A DNA stretch of 64,000 nucleotides from Macrostomum lignano (lineage: Eukaryota): contig NIVC01000031.1 of NCBI GenBank assembly GCA_002269645.1, positions 930,001-994,000 on the forward strand, written 5' to 3'. The translations under genes were made by a program, and so were the position numbers. Under the pieces are notes generated by a model. That model was not told where the DNA came from. It saw nothing but the letters and a program-made list of their open reading frames with translations, and searched no databases. How positions within the stretch are numbered: the stretch's first letter is position 1; every line of letters starts with the position of its first letter. This document shows, piece by piece, positions 804 through 28,868 of this stretch.

Positions 804-1962
804 TGCCTGCGGTGCTAAAATGAGTGCCTGTGGCGCTAAAATGAGTGCCTACGGCGCTAAAATGAGTGCCTGTGGCGCTAAAATGAGTGCCTACGGCGCT
901 AAAATGAGTGCCTACGGCGCTAAAATGAGTGCCTGTGGCGCTAAAATGAGTGCCTACGGCGCTAAAATGAGTGCCTGTGGCGCTAAAATGAGTGCCTGTG
1001 GCGCTAAAATGAGTGCCTACGGCGCTAAAATGAGTGCCTGTGGCGCTAAAATGAGTGCCTACGGCGCTAAAATGAGTGCCTGTGGCGCTAAAATGAGTGC
1101 CTGTGGCGCTAAAATGAGTGCCTACGGCGCTAAAATGAGTGCCTGTGGCGCTAAAATGAGTGCCTACGGCGCTAAAATGAGTGCCTGCGGCGCTAAAATG
1201 AGTGCCTGCGGTGCTAAAATGAGTGCCTGCGGCGCTAAAATGAGTGCCTGCGGTGCTAAAATGAGTGCCTGCGGCGCTAAAATGAGTTCCTGCGGCGCTA
1301 AACTGAGTGCCTGCGGCGCTAAAATGAGTGCCTGCGGCGCTAAAATGAGTGCCTGCGGCGCTAAAATGAGTGCCTGCGGTGCTAAAATGAGTGCCTGCGG
1401 CGCTAAACTGAGTGCCTGCGGCGCTAAAATGAGTGTCTCCGGGGCTAAAATGAGTGCCTGCGGTGCTAAAATGAGTGCCTGCGGCGCTAAAATGAGTGCC
1501 TGCGGCGCTAAACTGAGTGCCTGCGGCGCTAAAATGAGTGCCTGCGGTGCTAAAATGAGTGCCTGCGGCGCTAAAATGAGTGCCTGCGGTGCTAAAATGA
1601 GTGCCTGCGGCGCTAAACTGAGTGCCTGCGGCGCTAAAATGAGTGTCTCCGGGGCTAAAATGAGTGCCTGCGGCGCTAAAATGAGTGCCTGCGGCGCTAA
1701 AATGAGTGCCTGCGGCGCTAAACTGAGTGCCTGCGGCGCTAAAATGAGTGCCTGCGGCGCTAAAATGAGTGCCTGCGGCGCTAAAATGAGTGCCTGCGGT
1801 GCTAAAATGAGTGCCTGCGGCGCCAAAATGAGTGCCTGTGGCGCTAAAATGAGTGCCTGTGGCGCTAAAATGAGTGCCTACGGCGCTAAAATGAGTGCCT
1901 GTGGCGCTAAAATGAGTGCCTGCGGTGCTAAAATGAGTGCCTGCGGCGCCAAAATGAGTGCC
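804..1962. repeat. 21-bp tandem minisatellite (GCCTGCGGCGCTAAAATGAGT)n, about 55 units
   Basis: Unit read directly. It accounts for the ORFs 757..1980, 769..2013 and 1164..1826. Confidence 0.97.
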
Positions 1963-3233
1963 AAAATTAGTCATGTACATGTTGAATTCTTGGCTTTGTC
2001 CCCCCTACCATAAAATCCATGGCGACGCCCCTGAAGGCAACTGCAGCGAGCTGCAGCCGAGGGGCCTTGGCGTGGGCCGAAAAGCATAGATACTGAAAGC
2101 AAGTCTTTTCCGCTCGCCGAGAAAAAACCTCCAGAAAATTTCTGGAGGAAAAAAACGAGCGGCTAGAGACAGACGAGTGCATTCAGTATATTATTAATTA
2201 GACGGAATTGAGAACTGTTTGAGTTGTCTTAGTGCAAAGTCGGTAGCAGTGAGAGATTCAAGAATCAGGTGAATATAGCAGTTCAGTGCATCGTGATTTC
2301 AGGACAGAAACAGCAAAACTTGTAGAAAACTACCTCTTGTTTATGAAAACTAAGCTACGCTCGTAATAGAAGAAAATAACAAATCTTGAGTAAAACTGAC
2401 GCAATGATTTTAAATCGCTTGGGTTTCAAGTTATGAACTTTAAAACGCACACACACTACTAGTGATGAGAAGCTAGTAGCTAGATAGATTTAGAGTTACA
2501 TAATTCCGATGTCTTGCACTACCAGAAATGTTCCCATTTCTAAATGTATTAGGTATTTAAATTGACAAATGGTGCATGGAATGCATTGGTTAAACCAGAA
2601 AAGAACTGCAGATAGTGATTACATTGATTAGTGCCCACTGCCCACCCCAGAAGACGAACGCAGCAAGCTCAAGAGCAGCAAATGGCGCAGGAACAGCGAG
2701 GAGGTCAGGGAAGGCTGCCATGCACTCCCCCCCCGTATATTTCAGACCGATTACGAGAAAATATTCAAGCATTATTGACAACAGTTAGAACGGATCAAAG
2801 CAGGATTAAAAGAGTGACAGGATACGAAAAAAAATTTTTTTTTCAATTGCAATGCGACAGCGAGGCCAAAGAGCCAACCGCGGGGTATAAAACCCCCGCC
2901 ACGCAACCCCCCCCCCCAACACCGGGGGTGGGGGAAGCCGCGGGGAGGGGCAGGGGTGGGCAGCGTACACAAACGCCAGTTAGCGCAGCCCGCGCAAACT
3001 AGCCATTAGTGCCCACTGCCCACCCCAGAAGACGAACGCAGCAAGCTCAAGAGCAGCAAATGGCGCAGGAACAGCGAGGAGGTCAGGGAAGGCTGCCATG
3101 CACTCCCCCCAAACACCAAAAGCAGCAAGAAAACAGACTAGAGCAAAAGCAGACCAAGCAGAGGCAAGCAAAAGCGGACAAGCAAACAAAAAAGGAGCCC
3201 AAAACCTTTCTTCAAAAAAAACCGCGAAACACG

Positions 3234-4210
3234 TCAGGTTTGGTCAAGCGCCGCAACAGCAAGCTTGCGCGCCGCACGCAGAGCCGTGTCATCGCGGGAC
3301 AGGTAGACGCTCACTGCGTCGCTGCGCCAGTCACCCACGCACTGGATCTCCCGCACTGACAGGCCGCACCGGGCCGCCCAGGTGGCGGCGCCTCGCAGCA
3401 GGCTATGCACAGAAAACCCGGCCGCCGGCACTCCCGCCTTGCCGAGCCACGACCTGAACTGTACATCGAGCCTCCGAGACGTCAGAGATGCGTGACCGGA
3501 CGATCCACTGCTGAATGAAAACAGGCCCTGCTGCCGCCGCTTCAGCCGGTTGCAGCGCAGGTGGCCTCGCAGTGCCGCCACTGGACAGAGCGGGTGGCCC
3601 GAAGTCAACTCTGGCAGCAGCACGCGATGCGTCCGGCCGTACTGGTTGGTCTTCCCGAAGCTGGACGTCAGAAGCAGGCCTTCGGGGCATCTTGCCAGCG
3701 ATCTCAGTCGCAGCACTGGCGGATCGGCGCGCCCTCGCGGCAGCAGGCTGGACTTCCTGAACATCCCCCACCAAGCGCACATGACCGCAGCCCAGCAGGC
3801 CGCCTGCACAGGATTCGAGCTGTCGACTTGCAGCCGCAGTCTCGACAAAAGGTCTGGCGACACCGGCAGCTTGCGACTCGGCTCCGACCCCAGCCCGCGC
3901 TTGGCTCCCCGCAGAACCAGGTGCAGCAGCGGGTGCCTGGTCAGGTCCGGCACTCCCGCCAGTCGGAAACTGGCGGACAGAGCGCTGATATGCACGCGGA
4001 CGCTGCCGAAGGAGCTGAGCCGGCCGTCCACGAGCTGGCCGACGTAGTTTGCGAGATCCTCCGCCCGACAGCCGAGTGGGTCGAGCCGCCGCTCTCGGCA
4101 GAAGCGTTGCCAGGAGCGGACAGCAGATGACAGCGACCTCTTGGACGATGATGCGTAGGCCTGCTGGAGCAGTTTGGCGGCGGCAGCGTCGAGAGACCCA
4201 GGGAGGCGAC
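3234..4210 (-). CDS. Ngaro ORF3 tyrosine recombinase; open frame extends upstream of the tracked GTG start to 4210
   Basis: WGMFRKSSL (R), FGKTNQ (K), HSLLRGAAT, GDWRS and SVYL (Y) motifs. The frame is open from 4210 with no ATG ahead of the domain. Confidence 0.92.
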
Positions 4211-5913
4211 CTATAAAAAAAGAAAGGCGGCGGAGGCAGGGCTAAGCGCATGTCCCGCAAATTCATGCGGGCAAACAGAGGCGGTTGCATAGGCTCGCAA
4301 CAGAAAATTCAGCAACTCCTGCCGGCAATGCAGGCGGGAGGCGGCGTCGGCAAACAGCTGAAACCGGCCGGGCACATGGTGGGCGGTGACCACAATGTTC
4401 TGCTTTAGGCACAGCAGAGCAACAGTCTGCAGCAGCCGCAACAGCCGGGGCTCCCTGGATGACCCCTTGTTGATAATCGCGCAGGCTGCAGCATTGTCGC
4501 AGTAGACAGCGATCCGGCAGTTGTGCAGTTGACGGCGCCAGTGCAGCAACGCCAGCAGCACCGCGGCAGCCTCCTTGTAGTTGATGCAGCAATCGCTGAA
4601 CTCGCTCCCAGCGTCGACTTCCCACTGCAGATAGCACCAGTCAGAACCAGCCGGATCTCTCAGAACAGCCGCTGCCCCACCAGACAGGCGTCCGTCTCCA
4701 TGGCAACCGGCCTCCTGGCAGCAGGCCAGAGCTCGCGACCTGGCTGCTGCCGCAGAGCAACTTTCCACCAGCTCAGGACGCTCTTGAACTGGCCATCCAC
4801 CAACAGCCGATCCTTCGGGCTCGACAAGTCGTTGACGCGGTCGATCAGGTCTCGCAGAAACGGCCGGCCGTTGCAGACCACCTGACAGGCCCAGTTGAGC
4901 CTGCCCACCAGCTTCTGCAACTCGTGCTTGGAGATCCGCCGCTTTGTGCAGCAGAGGTCAAGGCAGGCCTGCAGCTCCTCGACCTTCGTCTCTGGCAGAC
5001 TCATCAGCCCCGACTGCGTGTTGAACTGAATGCCCAGAAAGCACATCTCCTGCGTCGGCTGCACGCACTTCTTCCAGTTGACAGTCAGGCCCAGGCTCTG
5101 CAGCAGCTGCGTCAGCTTGTTGTAAAAGCGCCAGCACTCAGTCAGCGAACCCGCGAAGCCGAAGTCGTCCATGTAGACCTCGAAGTTGAAGAACCTGCGC
5201 TTGAGCATCATAAACCGAATGGCGTTGCTGATCTGGAAAAAGCTGCTCACGGATGCTGCCGCTCCGAACGGCAGCCGGGTGTCCACCATGTAGGTCGGCT
5301 CCGCCTCGCCCTCGAACGTGAACTTCAGACCGGTGAGGCAGTGGTCGTCCGGGTGAATGCCGCAAGACCGGTAGGCCTGGCTCAGGTCAACTTTACACAT
5401 GTACATGTCCTGGCGCAGCTTCCTGGCAAAGGCAGCCGCCGAAGAAAACCGAAGCTTCTGCTGGCAAGCAAACAAATCATTGACGGCCCGACCCTGGGGC
5501 TGGCTGCAGTCATGGATGAGCCGGATGCCGCCCCCGGACTTCGGAATGGCGCCCAGCGCGCTCACAATAGTCGGCTTGGCGCTAACGCGATATCTTCCAG
5601 CTTGCAGTTCCCGGCGGACTTGGGCCTGAACCTCGACTCGATGCTGACCGATGGAGCCGTAGTTCTCCTGCTCGACAGAGTCCACCGGACTGCTGACGTT
5701 CCTGATGCGGAAACCGTCCTTCACACCGCTCAAAACGAACTGCGCGAGCTTCGTTGGCATCTCCGTGTCGGCCAGCTCGAGGCGCCAGGCTTCAAGGCGC
5801 AAGTCGGTGGAGAGGGTCCCGCTTGAGTCGCCCTCCTTTTGGGGTTCGACAGAAGCAGCGGCAGGGGCGGGCGACTCGATGTTAAGAGACCCCTGCCGCT
5901 GAACCCCGTCCAT
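4211..5913 (-). CDS. Ngaro ORF2 reverse transcriptase + RNase H, broken by a 1-nt frameshift at about 4676
   Basis: RLIHDCS, KVDLSQAY, RLPFG, YMDD, FLGI in ORF 4660..5913. ETDAC, YKEAAAVL, YCDN and ADAASR (RNase H) continue in ORF 4211..4768. Confidence 0.92.
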
Positions 5914-6944
5914 CAGTTTTTTGCCGCCTGGCCGCCCTCCGCTCTGTGGAAGGAGGCCTCCGAGTGCGCCTGGCCGCAGCGCCTACAACTGTGTGCGAAA
6001 CGACACGGGTTGCGCTGGCAGCCGGACACCTTGTTGAAGTCGAAGCAGACCGTTCGCTTTGCTGATGACCTGCCCGCTGAGCCGGCCTGCAGTTGAAGAT
6101 TCGGAGCCATCAGGTGTGCCGCCACCAGACCCAGGTCGGTCACCGAGCTGTCCCAGGCGCCGGCCTCAGCCTGCTGCGCTCTGTACTCATCATCATAGCG
6201 CAAAACGCGGCCGCGGTCGAATCCGAGATCGAGGAGGTCGCCAATTTTTGCCGTGTGCTTCAGGTACTCCAGCAGCTCCGACATGTCGATAGCGCCATCA
6301 CGGAGGACGAGGAGTCTGCCGTCCTTCAGCATCTGCATCAGCGCGTTGGCGTTTCCGGTGATCCAGTCGCCAACCGAGAGGCTGTCCAGGGCGGCCTGCT
6401 TGCTGGCTTGACTTGACTTGTTCAGCGCCAGCCGCTTGCGAGCGCTGATGAACTCCGGCACCCGGTACGCATTCGGGTGCTGCTGCCCCGCCTGCTGCAC
6501 CTCATCCGGCACTCTGACAGTAGGTCCCAGCACTAAATCCTCAAGGCTTGAGTACTCACCGGGCACTGAGGCATTTGCAGGTCGCCGCTGCGGCTCATCG
6601 GCACGGCGGTCCAGCTGACGGATCTCGGCTTCCAGGCGCGCTTGGTCCCGACGAATTGTCAGCAAGCGCAGCTGCTTCTCTGCCTCCCGCAGGTCCCGGT
6701 CCAGGTCGCCAGTCCCGTGGGTCCCTCCTGCCGCCTCGCCGCCGCCGACCGCCGCCGTCCCGTCGTCGGGCCCTCGCTTTCTCGATGGATTGCTGGTGTC
6801 CGATTCATCGATGGGTCCCGTGTCCACTGAGCCTTGAGACTGCAGAAGTCTCTCCAATAGGGTGCGCTTGTTGCCTACGGTTTGCAAGCCTTTAGCACGC
6901 AAGGCCATGCGCAGTTCTCTTACCGTCAGAGAATCGTGTGACAT
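5913..6944 (-). CDS. Ngaro ORF1 (Gag-like), 343 aa, with N-terminal SAP domain and C-terminal Cys/His zinc finger
   Basis: SLTVRELRMALRAKGLQTVGNKRTLLERL fits the SAP pattern; CFDFNKVSGCQRNPCRFAHSCRRCGQAH at the C-terminus. Confidence 0.88.
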   Translation of the reverse strand: MSHDSLTVRELRMALRAKGLQTVGNKRTLLERLLQSQGSVDTGPIDESDTSNPSRKRGPDDGTAAVGGGEAAGGTHGTGDLDRDLREAEKQLRLLTIRRDQARLEAEIRQLDRRADEPQRRPANASVPGEYSSLEDLVLGPTVRVPDEVQQAGQQHPNAYRVPEFISARKRLALNKSSQASKQAALDSLSVGDWITGNANALMQMLKDGRLLVLRDGAIDMSELLEYLKHTAKIGDLLDLGFDRGRVLRYDDEYRAQQAEAGAWDSSVTDLGLVAAHLMAPNLQLQAGSAGRSSAKRTVCFDFNKVSGCQRNPCRFAHSCRRCGQAHSEASFHRAEGGQAAKN

Positions 6945-7333
6945 GACTCAGCAGCAAAAAAAAAATAGCGCAATGCGACAGCGAGGCCTGCGACAGCGAT
7001 TTTTTTCAATCGCAATGCGACAGCGAGGCCAAAGAGCCAATCGCGGGGTATAAAACCCCCCGCCACGCAACCCCCCCCCCAACACCGGGGGTGGGGGGAA
7101 GCCGCGGGGGAGGGGCAGGGGTGGGCAGCGTACACAAACGCCAGTTAGCGCAGCCCGCGCAAACTAGCCAGAAAAGCCAACTAATCAAATTCATTGTCCT
7201 TAATTTTATAACCCAACCCCGACTATATTGCTTAGTAACTTAGTGGTAAGAAGAATAAGCGGTATTGATCAGTAACCATCCAAGTTAAAACACGACTGGC
7301 CAAGATTCACTTCATCAAGCGGTTGCAGTGCCA

Positions 7334-8720: not shown

Positions 8721-9534
8721 CAGCATGCATTGAATAACTGTAGGCAGCAGATTTTCAGTCAGAGTGGCAGTCACTTACCAAATAGGAAAAGTAATTGTAA
8801 AGACACAACTTTATCAACCATGCTAGCTCCAGTGATAACTCGTTTTTTGGCCTTCAATTTCACTTGCAATTTTTCTTAAAAAGATTGTTAGATAGCTTTT
8901 TTACCTGTCTTGTGACTGCTGAAAACACCAATCAATTCCTTGGTTGTGTAGTGAGTTCTGTATAAATACTCGCAGGCAGGAAACAGAGTGCGTTCGCTGC
9001 TACTTGTCTGGGAGCTGCTTTTGAGCAGACGCTAGCTAGAGATTAAATCAAGTAGACGTGAAAGGTAGTCTGAACAAAGGCGGGTTTGCAGCCGATTCCA
9101 GACATGAGCTGTCCTCGTGGCGCAGGAGCTTTGTCTATCGACGATTCTTATCGATGAAATCGATGCTTTCTGCAGGAGTTTTCTAAATAATAAAAACTAT
9201 ACTCGTAAAACGGTTGTCGTCGTCTCAGATGCTTTGGGGGGGGGGGCTTTATGCCGCGCGAGGCTGCTCTGCCTTGCTCAATTTTATTCAATTTATCCAA
9301 CTTTAATTTTTCCCCTTTCATCCACCGTTGTTTCTAATCACTATCGTATTGAGCGCATCAAAATGCATTTCGATCTACCGAAAGGTCCTGCTGTCGGCAG
9401 ATTTTGCAATGGGACTGATAACCAGCAGCTTTTATGCATTTACTGGAAACGAGATTTGACTTTCAAATTACACACGAGACAGTCGCTTAAAAAATCAGAT
9501 AGATGAGATACCTGCTTCCGCGGACTTAAAGATG

Positions 9535-9886
9535 ACATCATGCACAATCAGATAGATGAGATCATGCACAATCAGATAGATGAGATCATGCACAACCAGA
9601 TAGATGAGATCATGCACAATCAGATAGATGAGATCATGCACAATCAGATTGATGAGATCATGTACAATAAGATTGATGAGAGCATGCACAATCAGATAGA
9701 TGAGATCATGTACAATCAAATAGATGAGATCATGCACAATCAGATAGATGAGATCATGCAAAATCAGATAGATGAGATCATGCACAATCAGATAGATGAG
9801 ATCATGCACAATCAAATAGATGGGATCATGTACAATCAGATAGATGAGATCATTCACAGTCAGATAGATGGGATCATGTACAATCA
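9535..9886. repeat. 24-bp minisatellite (ATGCACAATCAGATAGATGAGATC)n, left part
   Basis: Unit read directly; interrupted by the gypsy element. Confidence 0.95.
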
Positions 9887-10116: not shown

Positions 10117-13100
10117 TCAAGCAAAGCCCGCCATGTACAAGTCAGGTGGCCGCCGCTCTCTCGCCGACCGCCGCGGAACCGTGACCGGCTCGGCCGGCGC
10201 CGCCGGCTGCTCCTCGGGTGCCTCGTCTGCCTGCAGCTCGGGCCAGAAGGTCACCGCGTCGCCGCCAGGATCGGCCGCCTGCCCGGGCGGCTCAGCGACG
10301 GTGCCGTCGTTGTCGAAGTCGGCGGCCGGCGGCTGGTGGTCTGCTGCGGCCGGAAGCTCCAGTGACGCCCGCCGCTGCACGAAGCACTTGAGGCGGTCGT
10401 GGTGCACCACCAGCCGGCGCCTGCGGCCGGTCTCGTCCTGGATGCGGTAATTGACCTCGCCCAGGCGCCTCAGGACTCGGTACGGCCCCTTCCACTTGGC
10501 GCTCAAACACCGCGTCTGGCCGCGCTTGACGACGGAGTTGCGCAGCATCACGAGCTGGCCCTCTTCGAACGGCACAAACCGAGAGTCCTGGTTGGCCAGC
10601 CGGTTGCGCTCGGCCTGGGCGCTCCGCAGTCGGCCGTGCACCGTGTCGAAGGCGCTCTGCAGGTTCTCCTGAGTCCGCCGCAGGAAGCCGTGATGTCCAC
10701 CGTCGGCTGCCGGCCGGTCGCCGCTTATCAGCCAGCTGTCGAGATCCAGCCTCGGTGGCCAGCCGTGGAGGACCTGGTACGGACTGAGGCCGATGGTGCT
10801 GTGCACGGAGGTGTTGTAGGCCCAGGTCACATATGGCAGCTTGCTGTCCCAATCCTGCTGGTTCTCGGCCACCGTCGTCGCCAGCATATCGCCGAGCGTC
10901 CGGTTGCCTCGCTCGACGATTCCGTTGCCGCTCGGATGAAACGGCGACGTGCGCGTCTTTTCGACGCCCAGCTTCTCGCAGAGCCGGCCGAACACCTCGC
11001 TCTCGAATTGCCGTCCCTGGTCACTGTGCAGCACCTGAGGAGCGCCGTGACGCAGAACCACCGACTTGAGCAGCGCATCCGCCACCGTAACCGCGTCGAT
11101 CGCCGCCAGGGCTGCCGTCTCCATCCACTTGGAGAAGGCGTCGCACATGCTCAGGATGTACGCCTTGCCATCAGTCGTACGCGGAAGCGGCCCTTTGATG
11201 TCGATCTGCACCAGCTGCCACGGAGCCGTCGGCTGGCACGTCGACTGTAGCGGCGCCTTCTGCGGCTTGGTTGGACTCTTCTTGGCCAGGCAGACCGCAC
11301 AGCTGGCCACCCAGTTCTCGACGTCCCGTCGCAGACCAGGCCACCAGCAGCGCTCAGACAATCTCGCTCCGGTCTTGTCGACGCCGAGGTGTCCGCTCTG
11401 GTCACACGAGTGCGCCTGCTGCAGGAAATGTGGCCGCAGGTGACCGGGAATGACTGGCCGGCCACCGACCAGCAGGACTCCCGCCGAGCTCACCGAGGCC
11501 TCGTCCAGCAGCTCGCGAACCTGCGCCGCCCATGAATCGGACAGGCTGTCAATCCCTTCGGTCAGCGCCTGGAACGCCTTGCTCAGCAGCGGATCTTGCA
11601 GTTGCTCCTCGTGCAGGCGGCTGTCGTCCCACCGAGGCTGCAGGCGCGTGCCGGCCACCCGGCTCAGCGCATCCGGCACGACGTTGTCCATGCCAGGCCG
11701 GTACAGCAGCTCGAACGAAAACTGCTGCAGCGTAGAAAGCCATCGCGCCAGCCGACCTTCGGGGTCCTTCGTTGCCAGCAGACCTTGCAGTGGCCGGTGG
11801 TCCGAGTAGACTCTGAAGCTCGGAACACTCAGCAGGTACGTCCTGAAGTGCTTCAAACTCCAGACAAGCGCCAGCAGCTCGCGGTCGGTCGCCGAGTAGT
11901 TGCGCTCGGCCTTGTTGAGGGTGCGAGAGGCGAACGCCACAGGCAGCTCGGCGTCACCGTGCAGCTGGCTGAGCACCGCGCCGACGGCGAACTGACTGCT
12001 GTCGCAGCTGAGCACAAACTGCTTGGTGAAATCTGGCAGCCTCAGCACCGGAGCTGTCGTCAGCCGGTCCTTCAACTCGCGGAACGCTCGCTCGCAGTCG
12101 CTGCTCCACGCGAAGTCCCTCGATTTCACGCTGACGTCGTGCAGGACCCTCGCCGTCTGGCTGAAGCCTGGGATGAACCGGCGGTAGAAACCCAGCATTC
12201 CAAGAAACCGCTTCACCTCCTCGTTCGTCGTTGGGCTGGGCATGCTGCGAATGGCCTCGACCTTGCCGGGATCCGGTGCGATGCCCTGCTCGCTGATCAG
12301 GTGTCCCAGGTACAGCACCCGGCGATGGCCGAACGCGCTCTTGGCCTTGTGCAGCTTGAGTCCCGCGTCTCGCAGCCGCTTAAAAACTTCCGCCAGCCTC
12401 TCTAAGTGCTCGTCGAACGTCCTGCTGAAGACAATGATGTCGTCGATATAAGTCAGCACGGACTCCCAGGACAGGCCGGACATCACCAGCTCCATGAGCC
12501 GCTGGAACGTCGCCGGGGCATTGCACATCCCGAAGCCCATCTTGCAGAATTGCATCAGGCCGCGCGTCGAATAGAAAGCCGTCTTGTACCGGTCCTCCTC
12601 CGCCACCTCCACCTGGTGGTAGCCCTGCCGGCAGTCGATGGTGGAGAACCAGGAGCATCCGACAAGCGCATCCATGGCCTGCTGCAGGTGCGGCAGCGGG
12701 TATGCATCCTTGACCGTGCAGGCGTTGAGCTGCCGCCAGTCCGTGCACAGTCTGATGTCGCCGTTCTTCTTGCGGACCACCAGCAGGTTGCTGGCCCATG
12801 GCGATGTCGACGGTTCGATGATGCCGCTTTCCAGCATCTGACCGATCTTCTTGTCCACCTGGTCTCGCACAGACAGCGGCAGCCGGCGCTGGACCTGCCG
12901 GTGTGGCCGCGCTCCCGGCTCCAGCTCGATTTGGTGCTGCAGCAACGCCGTCGTGCCCAGGTCGTACTCGTGCCTGGCGAACAGGTCCTCGTTGCTCTCC
13001 AACAGCTGTCGCAGCCTCGCAGCATCCGGTTCGGGCAGCTCCGCGTTGATGTTCCAACCGACGGGGTTCTCCTGGGCCGCCTCCTGGCGACCGTCCCCGT

Positions 13101-13833
13101 CTGTCATCGCGCCTTCGAACGTGCCGACCGCCTTGTTGGCGTACAGCAGCACGGGCTCCTCTGCAAGGTTGCACATTTTCACCGGGATGCGGCAGTCGTC
13201 CGAGACCGCCAGCACGCGGCCCGGCAGGACGGCAGTGGACTTCACGAAGTCCTCAGACGGCTCAAAGACTCCCTGCTCGCCGCTGGAATCCACCTTGAGC
13301 CACACCAGCTTCTCGCTGCGGGCGGGCAGCTCCGTAGTTGCCGCCACACGCGCCACCAGGACACTCGGCACCAGGCGACAATCTGCTCGAGCCGGCTCGC
13401 TGCTGAAAGGCACAGCTGTGCCGTCGAACCTGACGACGCCTTCTTTAATGTCAATGGTCATCGCCTGCGACACCTCGCCAATGAAGTCCATGCCGATGAT
13501 CAGGCTGGGCTGGATGCCGTCCACGACTGTGAAGCGATGGCGCACGCGGATGGTCTGGCCGATCGAAACATCCGCTGCTGACAGGCCAAGGCAGCGCAGC
13601 CGGGATCCGTCGACAGCCGTCGGCAGCGCACCGATGTCGGTGGAGTCGATCTTGCACTGCAGTCTGTCGAACAGCGACTTGTCCATCAACGAAACTTGCG
13701 CGCCGGTGTCGAGCAGAGCAGGCGCTGACACGCTGCCAAAGTGCACCTTCACGAAGACTGAAGGCGCTGATCTGAGGGCCCCTTTTGAGCGGGTCGGTGC
13801 TGGCCCCAGGCTGCCGACCCTCAGAAGTTTCCC
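10117..13833 (-). CDS. Gypsy Pol (protease, RT, RNase H, integrase with GPY/F), probably made by -1 frameshift
   Basis: LLDTGAQVS, YIDD, CDSSQFAVGAVL, H-H-C-C zinc motif, QIDIKG / SDQG / VERGNRTL, KWKGPY. Confidence 0.96.
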   Translation of the reverse strand, partial: GKLLRVGSLGPAPTRSKGALRSAPSVFVKVHFGSVSAPALLDTGAQVSLMDKSLFDRLQCKIDSTDIGALPTAVDGSRLRCLGLSAADVSIGQTIRVRHRFTVVDGIQPSLIIGMDFIGEVSQAMTIDIKEGVVRFDGTAVPFSSEPARADCRLVPSVLVARVAATTELPARSEKLVWLKVDSSGEQGVFEPSEDFVKSTAVLPGRVLAVSDDCRIPVKMCNLAEEPVLLYANKAVGTFEGAMTDGDGRQEAAQENPVGWNINAELPEPDAARLRQLLESNEDLFARHEYDLGTTALLQHQIELEPGARPHRQVQRRLPLSVRDQVDKKIGQMLESGIIEPSTSPWASNLLVVRKKNGDIRLCTDWRQLNACTVKDAYPLPHLQQAMDALVGCSWFSTIDCRQGYHQVEVAEEDRYKTAFYSTRGLMQFCKMGFGMCNAPATFQRLMELVMSGLSWESVLTYIDDIIVFSRTFDEHLERLAEVFKRLRDAGLKLHKAKSAFGHRRVLYLGHLISEQGIAPDPGKVEAIRSMPSPTTNEEVKRFLGMLGFYRRFIPGFSQTARVLHDVSVKSRDFAWSSDCERAFRELKDRLTTAPVLRLPDFTKQFVLSCDSSQFAVGAVLSQLHGDAELPVAFASRTLNKAERNYSATDRELLALVWSLKHFRTYLLSVPSFRVYSDHRPLQGLLATKDPEGRLARWLSTLQQFSFELLYRPGMDNVVPDALSRVAGTRLQPRWDDSRLHEEQLQDPLLSKAFQALTEGIDSLSDSWAAQVRELLDEASVSSAGVLLVGGRPVIPGHLRPHFLQQAHSCDQSGHLGVDKTGARLSERCWWPGLRRDVENWVASCAVCLAKKSPTKPQKAPLQSTCQPTAPWQLVQIDIKGPLPRTTDGKAYILSMCDAFSKWMETAALAAIDAVTVADALLKSVVLRHGAPQVLHSDQGRQFESEVFGRLCEKLGVEKTRTSPFHPSGNGIVERGNRTLGDMLATTVAENQQDWDSKLPYVTWAYNTSVHSTIGLSPYQVLHGWPPRLDLDSWLISGDRPAADGGHHGFLRRTQENLQSAFDTVHGRLRSAQAERNRLANQDSRFVPFEEGQLVMLRNSVVKRGQTRCLSAKWKGPYRVLRRLGEVNYRIQDETGRRRRLVVHHDRLKCFVQRRASLELPAAADHQPPAADFDNDGTVAEPPGQAADPGGDAVTFWPELQADEAPEEQPAAPAEPVTVPRRSARERRPPDLYMAGFA

Positions 13834-14615
13834 TGCGGCTGACCAGTTGGTGTCGGGCACACCGCGGCGGAGTGACCCTTGCCTGAGCACCGGCTGCAGC
13901 GGCTGCCGATCGCCTTTGGGCACCGCCTAGCAATGTGACCCGGCTCGCCGCAGCTGAAGCACTTAATGGGTCCCTTCTGACGCCTGTCTCTTCCGGGTGG
14001 TCCCGTTCGCACGCTGGCTGTCAGCTGCTGCATCTGCTGCTCCAGCTGGCTCAGCCGTCTGTCTTCTACCGACACCGCGGCTGATGAGGCTGTAGTTGCG
14101 TGGCTCACCAGCTCAAGCTGCGCAGCTCTGTCGACGATGGCGGCCAGCGAACACGAGTCCGCGTCCTGGTCCTTCAACAGCGCATCTCTCACGGCAGATG
14201 GCAGGAGGCGCATCAGACGAAACTTCACGTCCTTTTCCCGAGCCGCCACGGAGTCGTCCGGGCGGGCCCGAAGGTGGAGAAGCTTCAGGCTGTAGGCGAG
14301 CTCCCTCAGCGACTCGTTGGGCTGTCGCTTTCGCTCTTCAAACTCCTCCATTGCTCTGTAGCAGCTCAGACTGTTGCCGAAGCACTCGATCAGCTTCTCC
14401 TTCAGCCTTTCATAGCTGGCTGACACGTCTGCCGGCTGCTCCCAGACGAAGATTTGCGCTTCTCCTGTCACCAGCAGTCTCAGCTTCTTTGCCTTCTTCT
14501 TGTCGTCCCATTCGCAGTCGTCGGCGAAGTCCTCAAACGTGCTTAGCCACATTCTCACGTTGGAGTCGCCGCTGAACTTTGGAGGCAATAAACTGGCTTG
14601 CTCTGATTTGGCCAT
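13821..14615 (-). CDS. Gypsy Gag, 264 aa, with two CCHC zinc knuckles
   Basis: CFSCGEPGHIARRC and CSRCSGKGHSAAVC. Confidence 0.94.
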   Translation of the reverse strand: MAKSEQASLLPPKFSGDSNVRMWLSTFEDFADDCEWDDKKKAKKLRLLVTGEAQIFVWEQPADVSASYERLKEKLIECFGNSLSCYRAMEEFEERKRQPNESLRELAYSLKLLHLRARPDDSVAAREKDVKFRLMRLLPSAVRDALLKDQDADSCSLAAIVDRAAQLELVSHATTASSAAVSVEDRRLSQLEQQMQQLTASVRTGPPGRDRRQKGPIKCFSCGEPGHIARRCPKAIGSRCSRCSGKGHSAAVCPTPTGQPQGNF

Positions 14616-19433: not shown

Positions 19434-20408
19434 ATCTACTCTTCATCAAGCGAGCCACTTTACCTAAAATCAATCAACCAGCGAACTCGCGACTCATAGC
19501 AAACAAACAACTGACATTCAATAACACTAGAATACACTATCATTAAAACTAAAACACCACAATGTCACAACACTCACCCTTTAGCGTCACCACATTTCTG
19601 CGTCAACAACCGCCTCCTCATATGTAAGCGCGGACTCACCGAGTGTCTTCATGCGGTCGTCCCTCGGACGCTGAAGTAGGTCCAGGCCTGACGCGGTGCC
19701 GAGCTCGAACCCCGTGAGCGCCCTGCTCAGAAGCGGCCGATGAGGCTGGGTGGGAAGCTGCAGCGCTGTGGGAGCGAATGAGGGAGGCAGCTGCTGACTG
19801 CCACAACATACCAAAGCAAAAGTGAAATAAATATTTCCAATCCGAAACCTCTCTTCCCAAATAAAACACCTGCAGCTATGACAGCTTCAGCTTGCTTGCA
19901 GCTTCAGTTCTCGCGCAACAGAATGACAGGCCAGCTAAACTTCAAAATGCTTCACTGATTTTTGAACTCCGAGTAATTTTTCTGACTGCTTTTTGGAGCT
20001 CAGAACTGAGAGAATGCGAGTCCCAGGTTATTGATTCATAAATGCGCCAACATAATAATTCCTTGTGTTAAAGAAACTCCTGCAGATATAGCTGTGGGTG
20101 GTGGCACCATGTGGAATTCGCGATTACAATGCAGAGATTGGGAGCGCCATGAGGAGCTGCCCTGACAAAATACACCTGTTAAATGTACACCGCAACCCCC
20201 AAAACATACGCAAAACAACCCAGCATCAACTCCCCAGACACCCGCGACACCCGCCACACGCTACCACAGCCTGACAAATTCGTGACGCCCTGGCTTGACT
20301 GCGGCGCTGCTGAGAATTTAAGGGGCCGATCATCAAAGCGCAATGAATTTTCGCCAAAAATATTTTCAGTATTTCAGTGTCAGGCAGCAGTTCTCAGTCA
20401 GGACTCAC

Positions 20409-21340
20409 CCAGCTGAGGCGGCAGTCGGCGTTGAGCTGCCAGCGGGAGGCCGAGAGGCTTTGAGCCGCCACAGCGAGGAGGAAATCCAGGCTCGCTTTGC
20501 TGACTTGTCTGTGACCCACCGCCAACTCTCAACAGCATCAGTCATCGCTTCTCCCTGGTTGTTCTTCAAGCTGAACATTTCGGCTCCGATTCGCTCAAAA
20601 ATGAACTGAAGCGAGTCGACTGGTTGATGCTCAGCGGCCCAATGGACGGCCGTGTCACCGTATTTGTCAGGAACTGTGAGACAGTCGCTGCCGAGCTCCT
20701 TCACCAGCCACTTCAGATTTGAATTGTCAGACTTCCAAGCAGCAATGTGAAATGCTGTTCTATCACTATCTACCTTCAGCCGAAAGCAGTCAGTTCCGAT
20801 CTGTCTCTTGATCCACTCCAGCGACTCGATGCTTTGATACAGAGCGGCCAAATGGACGGCCGTGTCACCGTCTCTGTCAGAAACTGTGAGACAGTCGCTG
20901 CCGAGCTTCTTCACCAGCCACTTTAGACAAGAGTTGCTTTTTCTGTTCATAGCTGCAAAATGCACGACTGTCTGTCTCCAACGATCTACAATTCTCAAGC
21001 AGCGTTTGCCTCCCTTCTCTTTAACAAGCTTCATCCAAGATTCGTCCTGATGCTGGGCTGCCAAGTGCACTGGAGTCTGACCTCGGTCATTTCTATGTGT
21101 CAGACAGCCGGGTCCGAATCTGTCAATCAGCAGCTCCAGGCACGACGAACTCACCGGCTTGCAGGCCACGTGATGAGCAAGCGGCATTTTGCGAAGCTCT
21201 TCAAAGGGATAGTCTTGCGTGTCAAACCCGCCCACCTCCAGCTCGATGTTGCTGTCGATCTCACCGCACAGTCGCTGCAGCTCCTCGCTGTCTCCAGCCT
21301 CCAGCGCCGCTCTCAGCTTCCGCTCCATCTCTGTTGCCAT
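20409..21340 (-). CDS. Ankyrin-repeat exon (about 6 repeats), possibly the 5' part of the kinase gene
   Basis: GQTPVHLAA, QTVVHFAA, GDTAVHLAA, RTAFHIAA and GDTAVHWAA; ends at the donor GG|GTGAGT. Confidence 0.88.
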
Positions 21341-22039
21341 GGTTACACTGCTTCTCCTAGCAGCGCTTCTCTGCCGATCCGCTTTCCGTCGCAGCTGTTC
21401 CACACGGCTTCAAACTGAGTGCTTTGCTCTTCTTCAAGCGAATTTGCCTGCCAGCTCAGCAGCAGCAGCAAAAGTCCCGCTGTCACGGACTGAAATCTCT
21501 GAGCTCTCCCTGTGCAGAGAAATTTGTTTAAATGGACTGAGGCCGATTCTCTTCTCTGACCCAGCGGCTGTGTTTGAGGCCTGATTGGGTGCCAGGGGGT
21601 CCGGCAGCTGCTCTGCTCAGCGGGGTGAGAGATGCAGGAGCAGTGAGATGCTGCGAGCTCTGCTGAGTTAAACAATGAGAGCTGACTGTGGCTGCGTGCT
21701 CGGCATAGCAAGTGCATTGTCAGTGGGCAGGGGTGAAGGGGCGGCAGCTGAGACACGAGGGGAGAGAGATGGAGGGAGGGCAGGGCTGTGAGGCCTGGAA
21801 GCCAAGCAGAGCTCTCTGACGATTTTCAATTTATTTTGCGATTGCATGGCAAATTTTTTGAAGAAAATTGCTTATAAGTAACTGAGAATGCTTTTAAGAA
21901 AAATTCAACGCTTGCAATTATTATTTTAAATATTATATATTAAAAATAATATTGTTTTCGACACATTTTTGTTTTCATGAACCGAATAATTCGAACTGCT
22001 CCCAACATTCTTTTCATTCACTTACACGCAGCTTCATTG

Positions 22040-27522: not shown

Positions 27523-28868
27523 CGAGGTTTATTCAAAAAGTTCTTTTCGGTCCTTTGGCATTTATTTTTAGAAAGCGTTGTAAACAGAATTTTAGCGATT
27601 TTACCAAGTTATGTCTATGGCCTAAACGTTCCTAGGGTTTTAAGTCTCAGTTTGCAACTATGTTAGAGCAGCGAACATTTCTATCAGCTGCCACTCAATT
27701 TCTTGGCCATGGCTGAATCATTTTCAAAGCAAGACGTTCGAAGCTTGATGAAGTTTCAGTTTCTGCAAGGAAAAAAGCCACCGGATATGTTTAGGGAGCT
27801 TCAGCAAGTGCTAGGCAACTGTGCACCAACTGAGCAGACAGTTCGAAAATGGTACCGGCTGTTCTCTGAGGGAAGAGAGAGCGTTGAGGACAATGGCCGC
27901 TCTGGAAGGCCGATGACTGCAACCAAAGAGACTGTTGTGAAGAAAGTGCAAGAGCTCTTGGATGATGATCGGCGACGGACTTGCGAAGAGTTGGCAGAAG
28001 ACGTTGGTGTGTCAGTAGGAAGCGTCCACACTATTCTGACTGAGCGTCTTCTCCTACAGAAAAAGTTCTGCAAGTGGGTGCCACACCTGCTGACAGGTGA
28101 GCAAAAGATGCAGCGAACTCTGGCTTCAAGCAGCCACCTGCGTCGGTTCCATCAAGAAGGGGAGGATTTTCTATCAAGAATTGTTGCTGGAGACGAGACG
28201 TGGGTTTACAGCTGGGATCCTGAGACAAAGGCCCAGTCTGCCGAATGGCTTCCAGCACATTCTCCAAGACCTCAGAAGGCCATCAGGAAGCAGGGCGCGA
28301 TAAAGATCATGCACGTCATGTTTTTTGATTCCCAAGGAATCCTGCTGAACTGGGCAGTCCCACAAGGAACCACCGTCAATGGGGACTACTACAAGTGGAT
28401 TCTGCAGGAGAAGCTGCGCCCAGCAATACGAAAGAAGCGCCTTGGTCTGCTGGAATCTGGCGTGATCCTGCTGCACGACAATGCGCCAGCACATCGCAAG
28501 CACAACGTCGTGGAACTCCTGAGCAAATGGGGCTGGGAAGTGCTCCAACATCCACCCTATTCGCCTGATTTGTCGCCGTGCGACTTCTTCTTATTTCCAT
28601 CTGTGAAGAAGCACCTTTGGGGCATTCGATTTGACAGCGTCGAGCACATCGAAGCTGCATGCAATCAAGCTGTTCGCCAAACGGACGCGAGTGGTGTGAG
28701 TTCCGGAATCAGAGGCCTGGTAAATCGCTGGCAGAAGTGCAAAGACATTGGCGGTGAATATGTTGAGTGACAGAATCATGTTAAGCAATCTAACAGTGTT
28801 TTCATAGTTCCAGTTGTTTTGTGTTCAGTTTTGTAGGGCACCGAAAAGAACTTTTTGAATACACCTCG
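27523..28868 (+). mobile_element. Intact mariner transposon, 1346 bp, 29-bp TIRs, TA target duplication
   Basis: TA-CGAGGTTTATTCAAAAAGTTCTTTTCGGT ... ACCGAAAAGAACTTTTTGAATACACCTCG-TA (1 mismatch). Confidence 0.97.
27709..28770 (+). CDS. Mariner DD34D transposase
   Basis: WVPHLL, GDETW, HDNAPAH, YSPDLSPCDF; 34 residues counted between the second and third Asp. Confidence 0.96.
   Translation: MAESFSKQDVRSLMKFQFLQGKKPPDMFRELQQVLGNCAPTEQTVRKWYRLFSEGRESVEDNGRSGRPMTATKETVVKKVQELLDDDRRRTCEELAEDVGVSVGSVHTILTERLLLQKKFCKWVPHLLTGEQKMQRTLASSSHLRRFHQEGEDFLSRIVAGDETWVYSWDPETKAQSAEWLPAHSPRPQKAIRKQGAIKIMHVMFFDSQGILLNWAVPQGTTVNGDYYKWILQEKLRPAIRKKRLGLLESGVILLHDNAPAHRKHNVVELLSKWGWEVLQHPPYSPDLSPCDFFLFPSVKKHLWGIRFDSVEHIEAACNQAVRQTDASGVSSGIRGLVNRWQKCKDIGGEYVE

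What the first reader, a model, noticed from the sequence alone, without database searches (positions are those of the whole stretch)
5825..5922. Programmed -1 frameshift signal with a strong pseudoknot at the Ngaro gag/pol junction
Seen on the mRNA strand: A AAA AAC (5922-5916), in the gag frame directly before its stop. Then comes an 8-nt spacer, GGGGTT, stem 1 CAGCGGCAGGGG/CCCCTGCCGCTG (12 bp, 5901-5890 with 5867-5856), and a loop segment GAGTCGCCC (5877-5869) complementary to downstream GGGCGACTC (5833-5825, 9 bp). GGGGTT can also pair with AACCCC. A -1 slip enters the RT frame (K-K-L-M-D). The gag stop and pol ATG also overlap as TGATG, which allows stop-restart. Established: X XXY YYZ plus a pseudoknot 5-9 nt downstream drives -1 PRF; A AAA AAC is the MMTV gag-pro site. 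Inference: Gag-Pol is made by retrovirus-style recoding in a DIRS-order element.
Basis: partly seen in the sequence, partly recalled or inferred. Interest (0 to 1): 0.8.

Follow-up and report, generated by a model that had tools for sequence, protein, structure and literature searches.

The report
Ngaro retrotransposon gag-pol frameshift signal
A tyrosine-recombinase (Ngaro-type) retrotransposon in an animal genome carries a textbook "slippery site plus RNA knot" signal that very probably lets ribosomes slip back one base to make a Gag-Pol fusion; the mechanism is well known, but I found no description of it for this class of element.

Summary
On the minus strand, A AAA AAC (5922-5916) forms the last codons of a gag-like ORF. 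TGA follows at once and pol lies in the -1 frame. Eight nt downstream starts a bulged helix of 6 bp and 12 bp. Its loop is 9-nt complementary to downstream sequence.

The element has the Ngaro layout: A-gag-RT/RNH-YR-B-A-B. This copy's pol carries one frameshift and one stop.

Two independent relatives (L001/L004, L005) keep the heptamer in the gag frame directly before TGA. The preceding codon varies (GCA/CCA/TCA) but keeps its third-base A. All three helices persist, with 7 doubly changed pairs. Cells paired are 88%, against 29-53% in slid controls.

L005 lacks the TGATG overlap, which argues against stop-restart. More distant relatives either place pol in frame behind a single stop (often UGA CUA G, with no structure) or in -1 with G GGA AAC. 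Gag-Pol fusion by recoding is therefore the rule in this clade.

Verdict: a genuine, canonical -1 frameshift signal and a new member of a known kind. I found no description of it for YR retrotransposons in the literature I could search. Evidence is comparative only, from three sequences. The loop-to-tail helix is less certain than the main helix.

The parts
2627..7182 (-). Whole Ngaro-like YR retrotransposon, from the A1 repeat to the B2 repeat. It is the only copy in the window.
   Evidence: Repeat layout; ORF content; self-blast found no second copy.
7000..7182 (-). A1 repeat, the 5' member of the split direct repeats.
   Evidence: 7000-7170 matches 2837-3005 at 96.5% over 172 nt.
5913..6944 (-). 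gag-like ORF1, 343 aa, intact. It has an N-terminal SAP domain and a Cys/His-rich C-terminus, and ends ...AAA AAC TGA.
   Evidence: SAP, E 5.7e-07; 60% identity over 99% of its length to the 339-aa relative P0121.
5916..5922 (-). Slippery heptamer A AAA AAC in the gag frame. The P- and A-site codons AAA AAC are the last two sense codons of gag.
   Evidence: It is invariant in L001, L004 and L005. The preceding codon is GCA, CCA or TCA, so its third base is always A.
5911..5915 (-). TGATG: gag stop TGA (5915-5913) overlapping the first pol-frame ATG (5913-5911).
   Evidence: Kept in L001/L004 but not in L005, which has TGACG.
5908..5915 (-). 8-nt spacer between the heptamer and the first base pair of the outer helix.
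   Evidence: The spacer is 7 nt in L001 and about 10 nt to the first solid pairs in L005.
5902..5907 (-). Outer helix (S0), 5' arm GGGGTT. It becomes 7 bp if C5901 pairs with G5847.
   Evidence: Three of its 6 pairs change on both sides among the three sequences.
5841..5846 (-). Outer helix (S0), 3' arm AACCCC, separated from the stem 1 3' arm by a 9-nt bulge (5855-5847).
   Evidence: L001 has the same layout with a 9-nt bulge.
5890..5901 (-). Stem 1, 5' arm CAGCGGCAGGGG.
   Evidence: 97% of cells are paired across the three sequences, with 2 pairs changed on both sides.
5856..5867 (-). Stem 1, 3' arm CCCCTGCCGCTG.
5869..5877 (-). Stem 2 (pseudoknot), 5' arm GAGTCGCCC, lying in the 22-nt hairpin loop one nt before the stem 1 3' arm.
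   Evidence: 9-nt complement in 0.22% of shuffles; 2 pairs changed on both sides versus L001; duplex -19.1 kcal/mol, reached by 0.4% of shuffles.
5825..5833 (-). Stem 2 (pseudoknot), 3' arm GGGCGACTC, 7 nt after the outer helix. The conserved pol peptide starts just downstream.
3944..5922 (-). pol (RT plus RNase H), entered in the -1 frame at the heptamer. In this copy the gene is broken: one frameshift and one in-frame stop relative to the intact 661-aa relative P0001.
   Evidence: RVT_1 E 4.4e-14; RNase H-like hits; P0001 at 67% identity; count of breaks and outer bounds of homology.
3234..4031 (-). Tyrosine recombinase ORF, 265 aa, open and full-length against relatives. It overlaps the end of pol. 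It departs from the family at one near-invariant residue of a catalytic motif.
   Evidence: PF00589 only E 0.058 for this copy. (4444 relatives). (19 of 41 relatives hit PF00589). (family profile versus Cre, E 2e-17). (conservation list).
3005..3110 (-). B1 repeat.
   Evidence: 100% identical over 106 nt to 2627-2732.
2837..3017 (-). A2 repeat.
2627..2732 (-). B2 repeat, the 3' end of the element. It is separated from A2 by about 104 nt.

Best explanation
This is a programmed -1 ribosomal frameshift signal at the ORF1(gag)/pol junction of a Ngaro-type tyrosine-recombinase retrotransposon.

Proposed mechanism:
1. Most ribosomes translating ORF1 decode ...AAA AAC and terminate at the adjacent UGA, which gives the Gag-like protein.
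2. A minority slip. With AAA in the P site and AAC in the A site, the leading edge of the ribosome meets a stable bulged helix that begins 8 nt downstream (6-7 bp, then a 9-nt 3' bulge, then 12 bp).
3. The helix loop probably also pairs with sequence 3' of the helix (9 bp), which would make a pseudoknot.
4. On slipping, both tRNAs re-pair one nt upstream (AAA AAA). Translation then continues in the pol frame through a roughly 35-codon linker that encodes the RNA structure, and on into RT-RNase H. The product is an ORF1-Pol fusion made in a fixed low ratio.

Shown here:
- the sequence features and the frame relations;
- their conservation and covariation in two independent relatives;
- the absence of a conserved restart codon;
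- the use of recoding (readthrough or -1) at all ten related junctions examined.

Inferred:
- that slippage occurs, and how often;
- that the loop-to-tail helix forms together with the outer helix.

The window's own copy has a broken pol (one frameshift, one stop). In this copy the signal is therefore a well-preserved relic of the family's expression strategy.
For: 1. Anatomy. The heptamer is in the 0 frame, pol is in -1 and open through the heptamer, the spacer is 8 nt, and both the 12-bp and 9-bp complements are perfect. Shuffles match the 12-bp stem at 0.0004 and the 9-bp complement at 0.0022.

2. Heptamer type. PMC5009743 lists this heptamer type among the most shift-prone for mammalian cytoplasmic ribosomes. 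It gives 5-9 nt as the usual spacer.

3. Conservation. L001/L004 (67% RT and 60% gag identity) and L005 carry CAAAAAACTGA unchanged, while their gag C-termini and the preceding codon differ (GCA/CCA/TCA). In all of them the heptamer ends directly at the gag stop.

4. Covariation over the 27 pairs.
   - 88.3% of cells are paired, against 29-53% when partners are slid by 1-3 columns.
   - 7 pairs change on both sides (outer helix 3, stem 1 2, stem 2 2), against 0-2 in the slid controls.
   - 0 of 500 shuffles reach the observed covariation score.
   - Paired columns differ less than unpaired ones: 17% against 46% for window versus L001, and 35% against 57% for window versus L005.

5. Loop-to-tail duplex. 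It is -19.1, -20.7 and -20.7 kcal/mol in the window, L001 and L005. Shuffles reach these values in 0.4%, 0.2% and 1.5% of trials. The tails fold on themselves at only -10.2, -6.4 and -6.9 kcal/mol.

6. No conserved restart codon. L005 has TGACG, and its first pol-frame ATG is 13 codons downstream.

7. Family context (sequences).
   - Five related junctions have pol in the same frame behind a single stop. Two of them read UGA CUA G, a context reported to favour readthrough (bioRxiv 10.1101/2021.04.18.440353).
   - In four of these (L002, L003, L094, L096), sequence matching the conserved start of pol, or its frame, runs upstream of the first ATG.
   - None of those four shows a stable 3' structure (z from -0.2 to +1.4).
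   - Two more distant junctions have pol in -1 with G GGA AAC in the gag frame.

8. The linker between the heptamer and the conserved pol start is about 35 codons here, against 12-14 in the readthrough relatives L002, L003 and L094. The extra sequence is the RNA structure.
Against: - Only three independent junction sequences exist. The structure was also derived from one of them, which biases pair counts upward (caveat).
- Nested-fold z-scores are unremarkable for the relatives (L001 -0.57, L005 -1.25), because GC-rich shuffles also fold well.
- In L005 the loop arm of stem 2 is not in the same alignment columns. It needs a 4-nt bulge, and the spacer to the first solid pairs is about 10 nt.
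- The outer helix leaves only a 7-8 nt linker to the 3' arm of stem 2. Outer helix and pseudoknot may therefore be alternatives rather than one structure. A non-conserved nested alternative for the tail also exists in the window.
- The stem 1 arms also encode small conserved peptide motifs, so some conservation could act at the protein level.
- This copy's pol is broken, and no expression, protein or probing data exist.
- The original Ngaro descriptions (Goodwin and Poulter 2004; Poulter and Butler 2015) are not in the held library. An earlier mention of frameshifting cannot be excluded.
Confidence: 0.8

Rival explanations
1. Same -1 frameshift, but the stimulator is only the bulged hairpin (outer helix plus stem 1). 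On this view the loop-to-tail complementarity (stem 2) does not form on the ribosome-engaged mRNA, so there is no pseudoknot.
For: - The nested hairpin alone is very stable: -31 to -40 kcal/mol for the first 72 nt.
- It sits 7-10 nt after the heptamer in all three sequences.
- Only 7-8 nt link the outer helix to the 3' arm of stem 2, which may be too short to reach the loop of an 18-19 bp helix.
- Stem 2 of L005 is out of register and bulged.
- Stem 2 has the lowest share of paired cells, 79%.
Against: - Two stem 2 pairs change on both sides between the window and L001.
- Loop-to-tail duplexes of -19 to -21 kcal/mol recur in all three sequences, and shuffles reach them in only 0.2-1.5% of trials.
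- The nested alternative for the tail is not conserved.
Confidence: 0.22
2. Pol is made as a separate protein by termination-reinitiation at the overlapping UGAUG. On this view the heptamer and the helices serve another purpose or none.
For: TGATG is present in the window and in L001/L004.
Against: - L005 has no ATG at the stop. Its next pol-frame ATG lies 13 codons downstream, yet it keeps the heptamer, the frame and the helices.
- Five in-frame relatives place pol behind a single stop, and in four of them pol-like sequence or its frame runs upstream of the first ATG, which points to fusion proteins.
- I did not test for the upstream rRNA-complementary element that known eukaryotic stop-restart systems need.
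Confidence: 0.07
3. The frame change happens in the RNA, not on the ribosome. Polymerase slippage on the run of six A adds a base in a fraction of transcripts, which then encode the fusion directly.
For: A run of six A is present and conserved. Transcriptional slippage and structure-stimulated reverse-transcriptase slippage on such motifs are documented phenomena (PMC5009743; PMC5737552, listed).
Against: - Slippage alone does not explain why the run sits in the exact X XXY YYZ phase.
- It does not explain a downstream structure at ribosomal spacing that is kept by compensatory change.
- The distant relatives use G GGA AAC, which has no long homopolymer.
Confidence: 0.04
4. Nothing is programmed. 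The -1 offset and the complementarities are accidents of a decaying GC-rich copy.
For: This copy's pol is broken (one frameshift, one stop). GC-rich sequence folds well by chance.
Against: - The same offset, heptamer and helices occur in relatives with intact gag and pol (P0001, 661 aa) at only 60-67% protein identity.
- Shuffle odds are 0.0004 and 0.0022.
- Compensatory changes are present.
Confidence: 0.02

Closest known systems
gag-pol -1 programmed ribosomal frameshifting of retroviruses and LTR retrotransposons (heptamer X XXY YYZ plus a 3' structure)
   Same: - The slippery heptamer is in the gag frame near the gag stop.
- pol is in the -1 frame.
- A structured RNA lies 5-9 nt downstream.
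- The output is a Gag-Pol fusion at a fixed ratio.

PMC5009743 reports that 28 of 51 animal LTR retroelements surveyed have pol in -1, many with classical heptamers. The Ty3/gypsy element next door in this window shows the same design (G GGA AAC at 13833-13827).
   Different: - The carrier is a tyrosine-recombinase (Ngaro, DIRS-order) element with split direct repeats. It has no protease and no DDE integrase.
- ORF1 is a SAP plus Cys/His protein, not a recognisable retroviral capsid or nucleocapsid.
- I found no description of frameshifting for this order in the searchable literature.
Long-stem-1 H-type frameshift pseudoknots (the infectious bronchitis virus class described in PMC5009743)
   Same: Stem 1 has at least 11 bp (12 here, 13 in L005). 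A second stem forms between the hairpin loop and downstream sequence. The spacer lies in the usual range.
   Different: - Here stem 1 is extended by a further 6-9 bp helix across a 9-nt 3' bulge.
- Loop 1 is long (12 nt).
- The 3' arm of stem 2 follows the outer helix after only 7-8 nt.

The topology is therefore a three-helix arrangement whose steric feasibility is untested. No Rfam family matches it.
MMTV gag-pro frameshift site
   Same: Both are -1 frameshifts stimulated by a pseudoknot at the end of gag.
   Different: [quoted passage not shown] The structure here has a long, bulged helix of 18-19 bp and a 9-bp second stem. There is no sequence relationship.
Stop-codon readthrough at gag-pol (gammaretrovirus type; the UGA CUAG context; Tca2-like UGA junctions, PMC2194720)
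   Same: The nearest outgroup relatives of this element (L002, L003, L094, L099, L096) have gag and pol in one frame separated by one stop. Two read UGA CUA G. The biological goal, a Gag-Pol fusion at low ratio, is the same.
   Different: In the window pol is not in the gag frame, so reading through the UGA does not reach pol. The heptamer and the structured insert of about 60 nt are present only in the -1 sublineage.

Membership tests
Ngaro-like YR retrotransposon (DIRS order) | Terminal repeats arranged A1 - ORFs - B1 - A2 - B2 (PMC3783388, PMC6681497) | tested here: met
   A1 is 7182-7000 and A2 is 3017-2837 (96.5% over 172 nt). B1 is 3110-3005 and B2 is 2732-2627 (100% over 106 nt). One departure: about 104 nt lie between A2 and B2.
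Ngaro-like YR retrotransposon (DIRS order) | pol with RT and RNase H, but no aspartic protease and no DDE integrase | tested here: met
   RVT_1 scores E 4.4e-14 and RNase H-like hits are present. No protease or rve hits appear in any ORF of the element. The relative P0001 carries PF00078 and PF17917 only.
Ngaro-like YR retrotransposon (DIRS order) | Tyrosine recombinase ORF downstream of pol | tested here: met
   The window ORF alone is below threshold (PF00589 E 0.058). Its family is clear, however: there are 4444 relatives, 19 of 41 hit PF00589, and the family profile matches Cre at E 2e-17.
Ngaro-like YR retrotransposon (DIRS order) | No methyltransferase domain (this separates Ngaro from DIRS1-like elements) | tested here: met
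   No Dam-like hit appears in any ORF, nor in the precomputed domains of relatives. pol and YR overlap, which leaves no room for another domain.
Ngaro-like YR retrotransposon (DIRS order) | RT/RNH groups with reference Ngaro elements in a phylogeny | not tested
Canonical -1 programmed ribosomal frameshift signal | X XXY YYZ heptamer in the upstream (0) frame | tested here: met
   A AAA AAC at 5922-5916 in the gag frame. It is in the same phase in L001, L004 and L005.
Canonical -1 programmed ribosomal frameshift signal | Downstream ORF in the -1 frame and open across the shift site | tested here: met
   The -1 frame is open 60-114 nt upstream of the heptamer. Downstream it runs 1260 nt here, 1992 nt in L001, and to the ends of the L004 and L005 contigs.
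Canonical -1 programmed ribosomal frameshift signal | Stable 3' RNA structure starting about 5-9 nt after the heptamer | tested here: met
   The spacer is 8 nt in the window, 7 nt in L001, and about 10 nt to the first solid pairs in L005. The usual range comes from PMC5009743.
Canonical -1 programmed ribosomal frameshift signal | Signal conserved, with compensatory changes, in related elements | tested here: met
   One search gives 7 doubly changed pairs and 88% of cells paired, against 29-53% in slid controls. One search shows paired columns differ less than unpaired ones. Only three sequences were available.
Canonical -1 programmed ribosomal frameshift signal | A transframe product is made at a measurable rate | not testable with these tools
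H-type pseudoknot stimulator | Hairpin-loop bases pair with sequence 3' of the hairpin | tested here: inconclusive
   Complementarity is real and recurrent. The window has 9 perfect bp. Duplexes of -19 to -21 kcal/mol occur in all three sequences and are reached by 0.2-1.5% of shuffles. Two pairs show compensatory change. Formation together with the outer helix could not be evaluated, and no pseudoknot-capable folding or probing was available.
Termination-reinitiation (stop-start overlap) | Start codon overlapping or next to the upstream stop, conserved in relatives | tested here: not met
   TGATG occurs in the window and L001/L004. L005 has TGACG, with the next pol-frame ATG 13 codons later.
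Termination-reinitiation (stop-start overlap) | Upstream element that tethers the ribosome after termination | not tested
   Testing this would need a motif recalled from memory or the host 18S rRNA. Neither was available.
gag-pol stop-codon readthrough | pol in the same frame as gag behind a single stop | tested here: not met
   The window, L001, L004 and L005 have pol in -1. The feature is met only in the relatives L002, L003, L094, L096 and L099.

The most novel reading that the evidence does not exclude
Two readings go beyond an ordinary new instance.

1. The recoding mode may have been exchanged within one Ngaro-like lineage. Sister elements at about 50% RT identity use readthrough of a single in-frame stop, in two cases in a UGA CUA G context and with no detectable structure in those tested. 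This sublineage moved pol to -1 and acquired a heptamer plus a structured insert of about 60 nt.

2. That insert may be a three-helix stimulator: a bulged 18-19 bp helix whose loop also pairs 3' of the helix. All three helices show compensatory change. Such an arrangement would not fit the described short-stem or long-stem-1 pseudoknot classes.

Together these would be the first documented frameshift signal in tyrosine-recombinase retrotransposons. They would also offer a natural pair for comparing readthrough and frameshifting on homologous backbones.
Probability: 0.3. Interest if true: 0.6.

Novelty: new member of a known kind. Interest (0 to 1): 0.45.

Why it matters
How DIRS-order and Ngaro elements set the ratio of structural ORF1 protein to RT is essentially undescribed. 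The papers I could search mention only that ORFs may overlap or be frameshifted.

This locus and its relatives point to the same two solutions that retroviruses use, -1 frameshifting or stop-codon readthrough. The two appear to have been swapped between close relatives.

Three practical consequences follow:
- Annotators get a rule: do not call the -1 offset a defect, and do not start pol at the first ATG.
- The catalogue of eukaryotic frameshift stimulators gains a covariation-supported RNA structure.
- It gives a compact comparative system for asking how recoding signals arise.

The mechanism itself is canonical, so the gain is breadth rather than a new principle.

Tried and rejected
- Close relatives were scarce. 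A search with the RT ORF gave one relative at 67% identity and then a drop to 54% or less. The gag search gave four hits. A search with the first 130 pol residues gave one short hit whose 596-nt contig does not reach the junction.
- An exact-sequence look-up of the window's gag found nothing.
- Profile-guided scans of the metagenome, viral and prokaryotic genome contig collections with the gag alignment found no relative.
- A DNA pattern of heptamer, spacer and 5' arm of stem 1 gave 88 metagenome matches. All were chance, with no gag or pol homology by tblastn.
- Rfam gave only sub-threshold hits on the opposite strand.
- The original Ngaro papers could not be read.
- Literature searches for Ngaro, DIRS or tyrosine recombinase together with frameshift, readthrough or slippery found no description of a gag-pol recoding signal.
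- Global MFE z-scores were considered as evidence and largely set aside. In this GC-rich context they are weak for L001 and L005. The argument rests on specific helices, covariation and shuffle tests of those helices.
- I first saw only a 6-bp stem 2 in L005, a length that chance gives in about 15% of shuffles. Duplex folding then showed an 11-bp bulged pairing.


Full report
**1. The observation**

On the minus strand the window reads ...GGC GCA AAA AAC TGA in the frame of a 343-codon ORF (6944-5913).
- The heptamer A AAA AAC occupies 5922-5916.
- The stop is 5915-5913 and overlaps ATG 5913-5911 of the next ORF.
- That ORF's codons start one nt upstream of the gag codons, so it is in -1.

Downstream of an 8-nt spacer come three complementarities:
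- GGGGTT (5907-5902) with AACCCC (5846-5841);
- a perfect 12-bp stem, 5901-5890 with 5867-5856;
- a perfect 9-nt complement between the hairpin loop (5877-5869) and 5833-5825.

Every coordinate in the finding is right. In dinucleotide shuffles of the 100 nt after the heptamer, a perfect stem of 12 bp or more appears in 0.04% of trials. A loop-to-tail complement of 9 nt or more appears in 0.22%. ViennaRNA recovers the bulged helix. The nested fold of the 105 nt after the heptamer is -50.2 kcal/mol with z = -2.7.

**2. The element**

- ORF1 has a SAP domain (E 5.7e-07) and a Cys/His-rich C-terminus.
- The next ORF has RVT_1 (E 4.4e-14), followed by RNase H-like sequence.
- The third ORF (4031-3234) scores only E 0.058 against Phage_integrase on its own. 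It has 4444 relatives, however. Of 41 aligned relatives, 19 hit PF00589. The family profile matches Cre recombinase at E 2e-17.
- Repeats lie in the order A1 (7182-7000), ORFs, B1 (3110-3005), A2 (3017-2837), B2 (2732-2627). The A pair is 96.5% identical and the B pair 100%.

This is the layout that PMC3783388 and PMC6681497 give for Ngaro. There is no protease, DDE integrase or methyltransferase hit. The Ngaro label therefore holds on architecture. Phylogenetic placement was not tested.

State of this copy:
- gag is intact;
- the YR ORF is open and full-length but departs from its family at one near-invariant residue of a catalytic motif;
- pol is broken by one frameshift and one in-frame stop relative to the intact 661-aa relative P0001.

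Other ORFs in the window point to an animal genome: an ASC/ENaC channel, ankyrin repeats and a mariner-type transposase.

**3. Relatives with the same design**

The closest relative (P0001, 67% RT identity) lies on Logan contig L001. A second contig, L004, has an identical junction. A third lineage, L005, came through its gag (53% identity). In all three lineages:
- CAAAAAACTGA is unchanged;
- the heptamer is in the gag frame and ends directly at the gag stop;
- pol is in -1 and open across the site.

The gag C-termini differ, and the codon before the heptamer is GCA, CCA or TCA. The amino acid varies while the third-base A that the slippery pattern needs is kept. That pattern indicates selection on the nucleotide sequence rather than on the protein.

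**4. The helices**

All three sequences fold into a long bulged helix that starts 7-10 nt after the heptamer.

- 88.3% of cells are paired, against 29-53% when partners are slid by 1-3 columns.
- 7 pairs change on both sides (outer helix 3, stem 1 2, stem 2 2), against 0-2 in the slid controls.
- No shuffle out of 500 reaches the observed covariation score.

Paired columns are also better conserved than unpaired ones: 17% against 46% differences with L001, and 35% against 57% with L005.

The loop-to-tail interaction recurs in each sequence. Duplexes are -19.1, -20.7 and -20.7 kcal/mol, and shuffles reach these in 0.4%, 0.2% and 1.5% of trials. The tails fold on themselves at only -10.2, -6.4 and -6.9 kcal/mol.

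Limits on this evidence:
- There are only three sequences, and the structure was read from one of them.
- Global z-scores for L001 and L005 are unremarkable.
- Stem 2 of L005 is bulged and out of register.
- The outer helix leaves just 7-8 nt to reach the 3' arm of stem 2, so the two may be alternatives rather than one structure.

**5. Frameshift or restart?**

The TGATG overlap is kept in L001 and L004. L005 reads TGACG, and its first pol-frame ATG lies 13 codons further on. The heptamer and the helices are conserved; the restart codon is not.

The wider family settles what product is wanted.
- Among ten distinct junctions, five have pol in the same frame as gag behind a single stop: L002, L003, L094 and L099 with UGA, and L096 with UAG.
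- L003 and L094 read UGA CUA G, a context reported to favour readthrough.
- In L002, L003, L094 and L096, sequence matching the conserved start of pol, or its frame, runs upstream of the first ATG.
- Those four junctions show no stable 3' structure (z from -0.2 to +1.4).
- The other five have pol in -1 with a canonical gag-frame heptamer 0-12 nt before the stop: A AAA AAC in this sublineage and G GGA AAC in L097 and L098.

Every junction is built for a fusion made by recoding. [quoted passage not shown] The extra sequence is the RNA structure.

**6. Mechanism**

I conclude, with about 0.8 confidence, that the family makes ORF1-Pol by -1 ribosomal frameshifting on A AAA AAC. The stimulator is the bulged helix, probably reinforced by the loop-to-tail helix (about 0.6 for that part).

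PMC5009743 lists this heptamer type among the most shift-prone for mammalian ribosomes. It gives 5-9 nt as the usual spacer and describes a long-stem-1 pseudoknot class with at least 11 bp. The structure here resembles that class.

Polymerase slippage on the A run and pure chance are poor fits. Neither accounts for the phase of the heptamer, the compensatory changes, or the G GGA AAC relatives.

**7. Novelty**

The mechanism is canonical. The neighbouring Ty3/gypsy element in this same window shows it too. What appears new is the carrier. Searches for Ngaro, DIRS or tyrosine recombinase together with frameshift, readthrough or slippery found no description of a gag-pol recoding signal. The 2016 recoding review does not mention these elements in the part that is held. 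The original Ngaro papers could not be read, so priority cannot be excluded. No Rfam family covers the structure.

I rate it a new member of a known kind, of moderate interest. The most interesting aspect is the apparent exchange between readthrough and frameshifting among close relatives.

Noticed in passing
window 10117-14615 (minus strand): A Ty3/gypsy-type LTR retrotransposon lies next door. It has a gag-like ORF with a CCHC knuckle (14615-13821) and a pol ORF with protease, RT, RNase H and integrase (13923-10117) in the -1 frame. A gag-frame heptamer G GGA AAC sits at 13833-13827, 3 nt before the gag stop, and is followed by a GC-rich stem. This is a second, independent canonical -1 frameshift site in the same window.
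   Followed up: partly
L002 1107-1190; L003 1533-1610; L094 951-1058; L099 1254-1280; L096 2263-2365: Relatives at roughly 44-54% RT identity (L096, reached through its gag, is more distant at 28% gag identity) have gag and pol in one frame separated by a single stop. Four use UGA and one UAG. L003 and L094 read CAY UGA CUA G. In four of them (L002, L003, L094, L096), sequence matching the conserved start of pol, or its frame, runs upstream of the first ATG, and these four show no stable downstream structure. They look like readthrough elements.
   Followed up: partly
L097 4040-4061; L098 3968-3983: More distant Ngaro-like elements (40% RT identity) have pol in -1 and G GGA AAC in the gag frame, 12 and 6 nt before the gag stop. 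Their downstream structures were folded but not analysed further.
   Followed up: partly
window 3234-4031 (minus strand): The tyrosine recombinase ORF of this copy is open. It differs from its family at one residue of a catalytic motif that is conserved in at least 90% of 41 relatives, so the enzyme may be inactive. pol in the same copy has one frameshift and one stop.
   Followed up: partly
window 2733-2836: About 104 nt lie between the A2 and B2 repeats, whereas the textbook Ngaro layout draws them adjacent. I did not work out whether this is part of a longer, diverged A repeat or an insertion.
   Followed up: no
window 5813-5819 (minus strand): In longer folds the GGGGUU arm pairs instead with GGGACCC-like sequence downstream of the 3' arm of stem 2, enclosing the tail in a multiloop. 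L001 has no equivalent, so I treated this as a non-conserved alternative.
   Followed up: partly
window 804-1962 and 9530-9886: Two tandem arrays flank the element: 55 copies of a 21-nt unit (open on both strands as long repetitive ORFs) and 15 copies of a 24-nt unit.
   Followed up: no
window 20405-21403, 27703-28770, 29463-30905, 44388-45116: These ORFs carry ankyrin repeats, a mariner/Mos1-type transposase (HTH_48 plus a DDE domain), an ASC/ENaC sodium-channel fragment and a pseudouridine synthase domain. Together they suggest an animal host genome.
   Followed up: no
L095 (ENA ERZ27315224, 596 nt): This is a short contig. By eye its RT fragment is closer to the window's RT than P0001 is. 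The search itself reported only 76% identity over a short aligned stretch. It does not reach the junction, but the sample may hold the host or a near relative.
   Followed up: no
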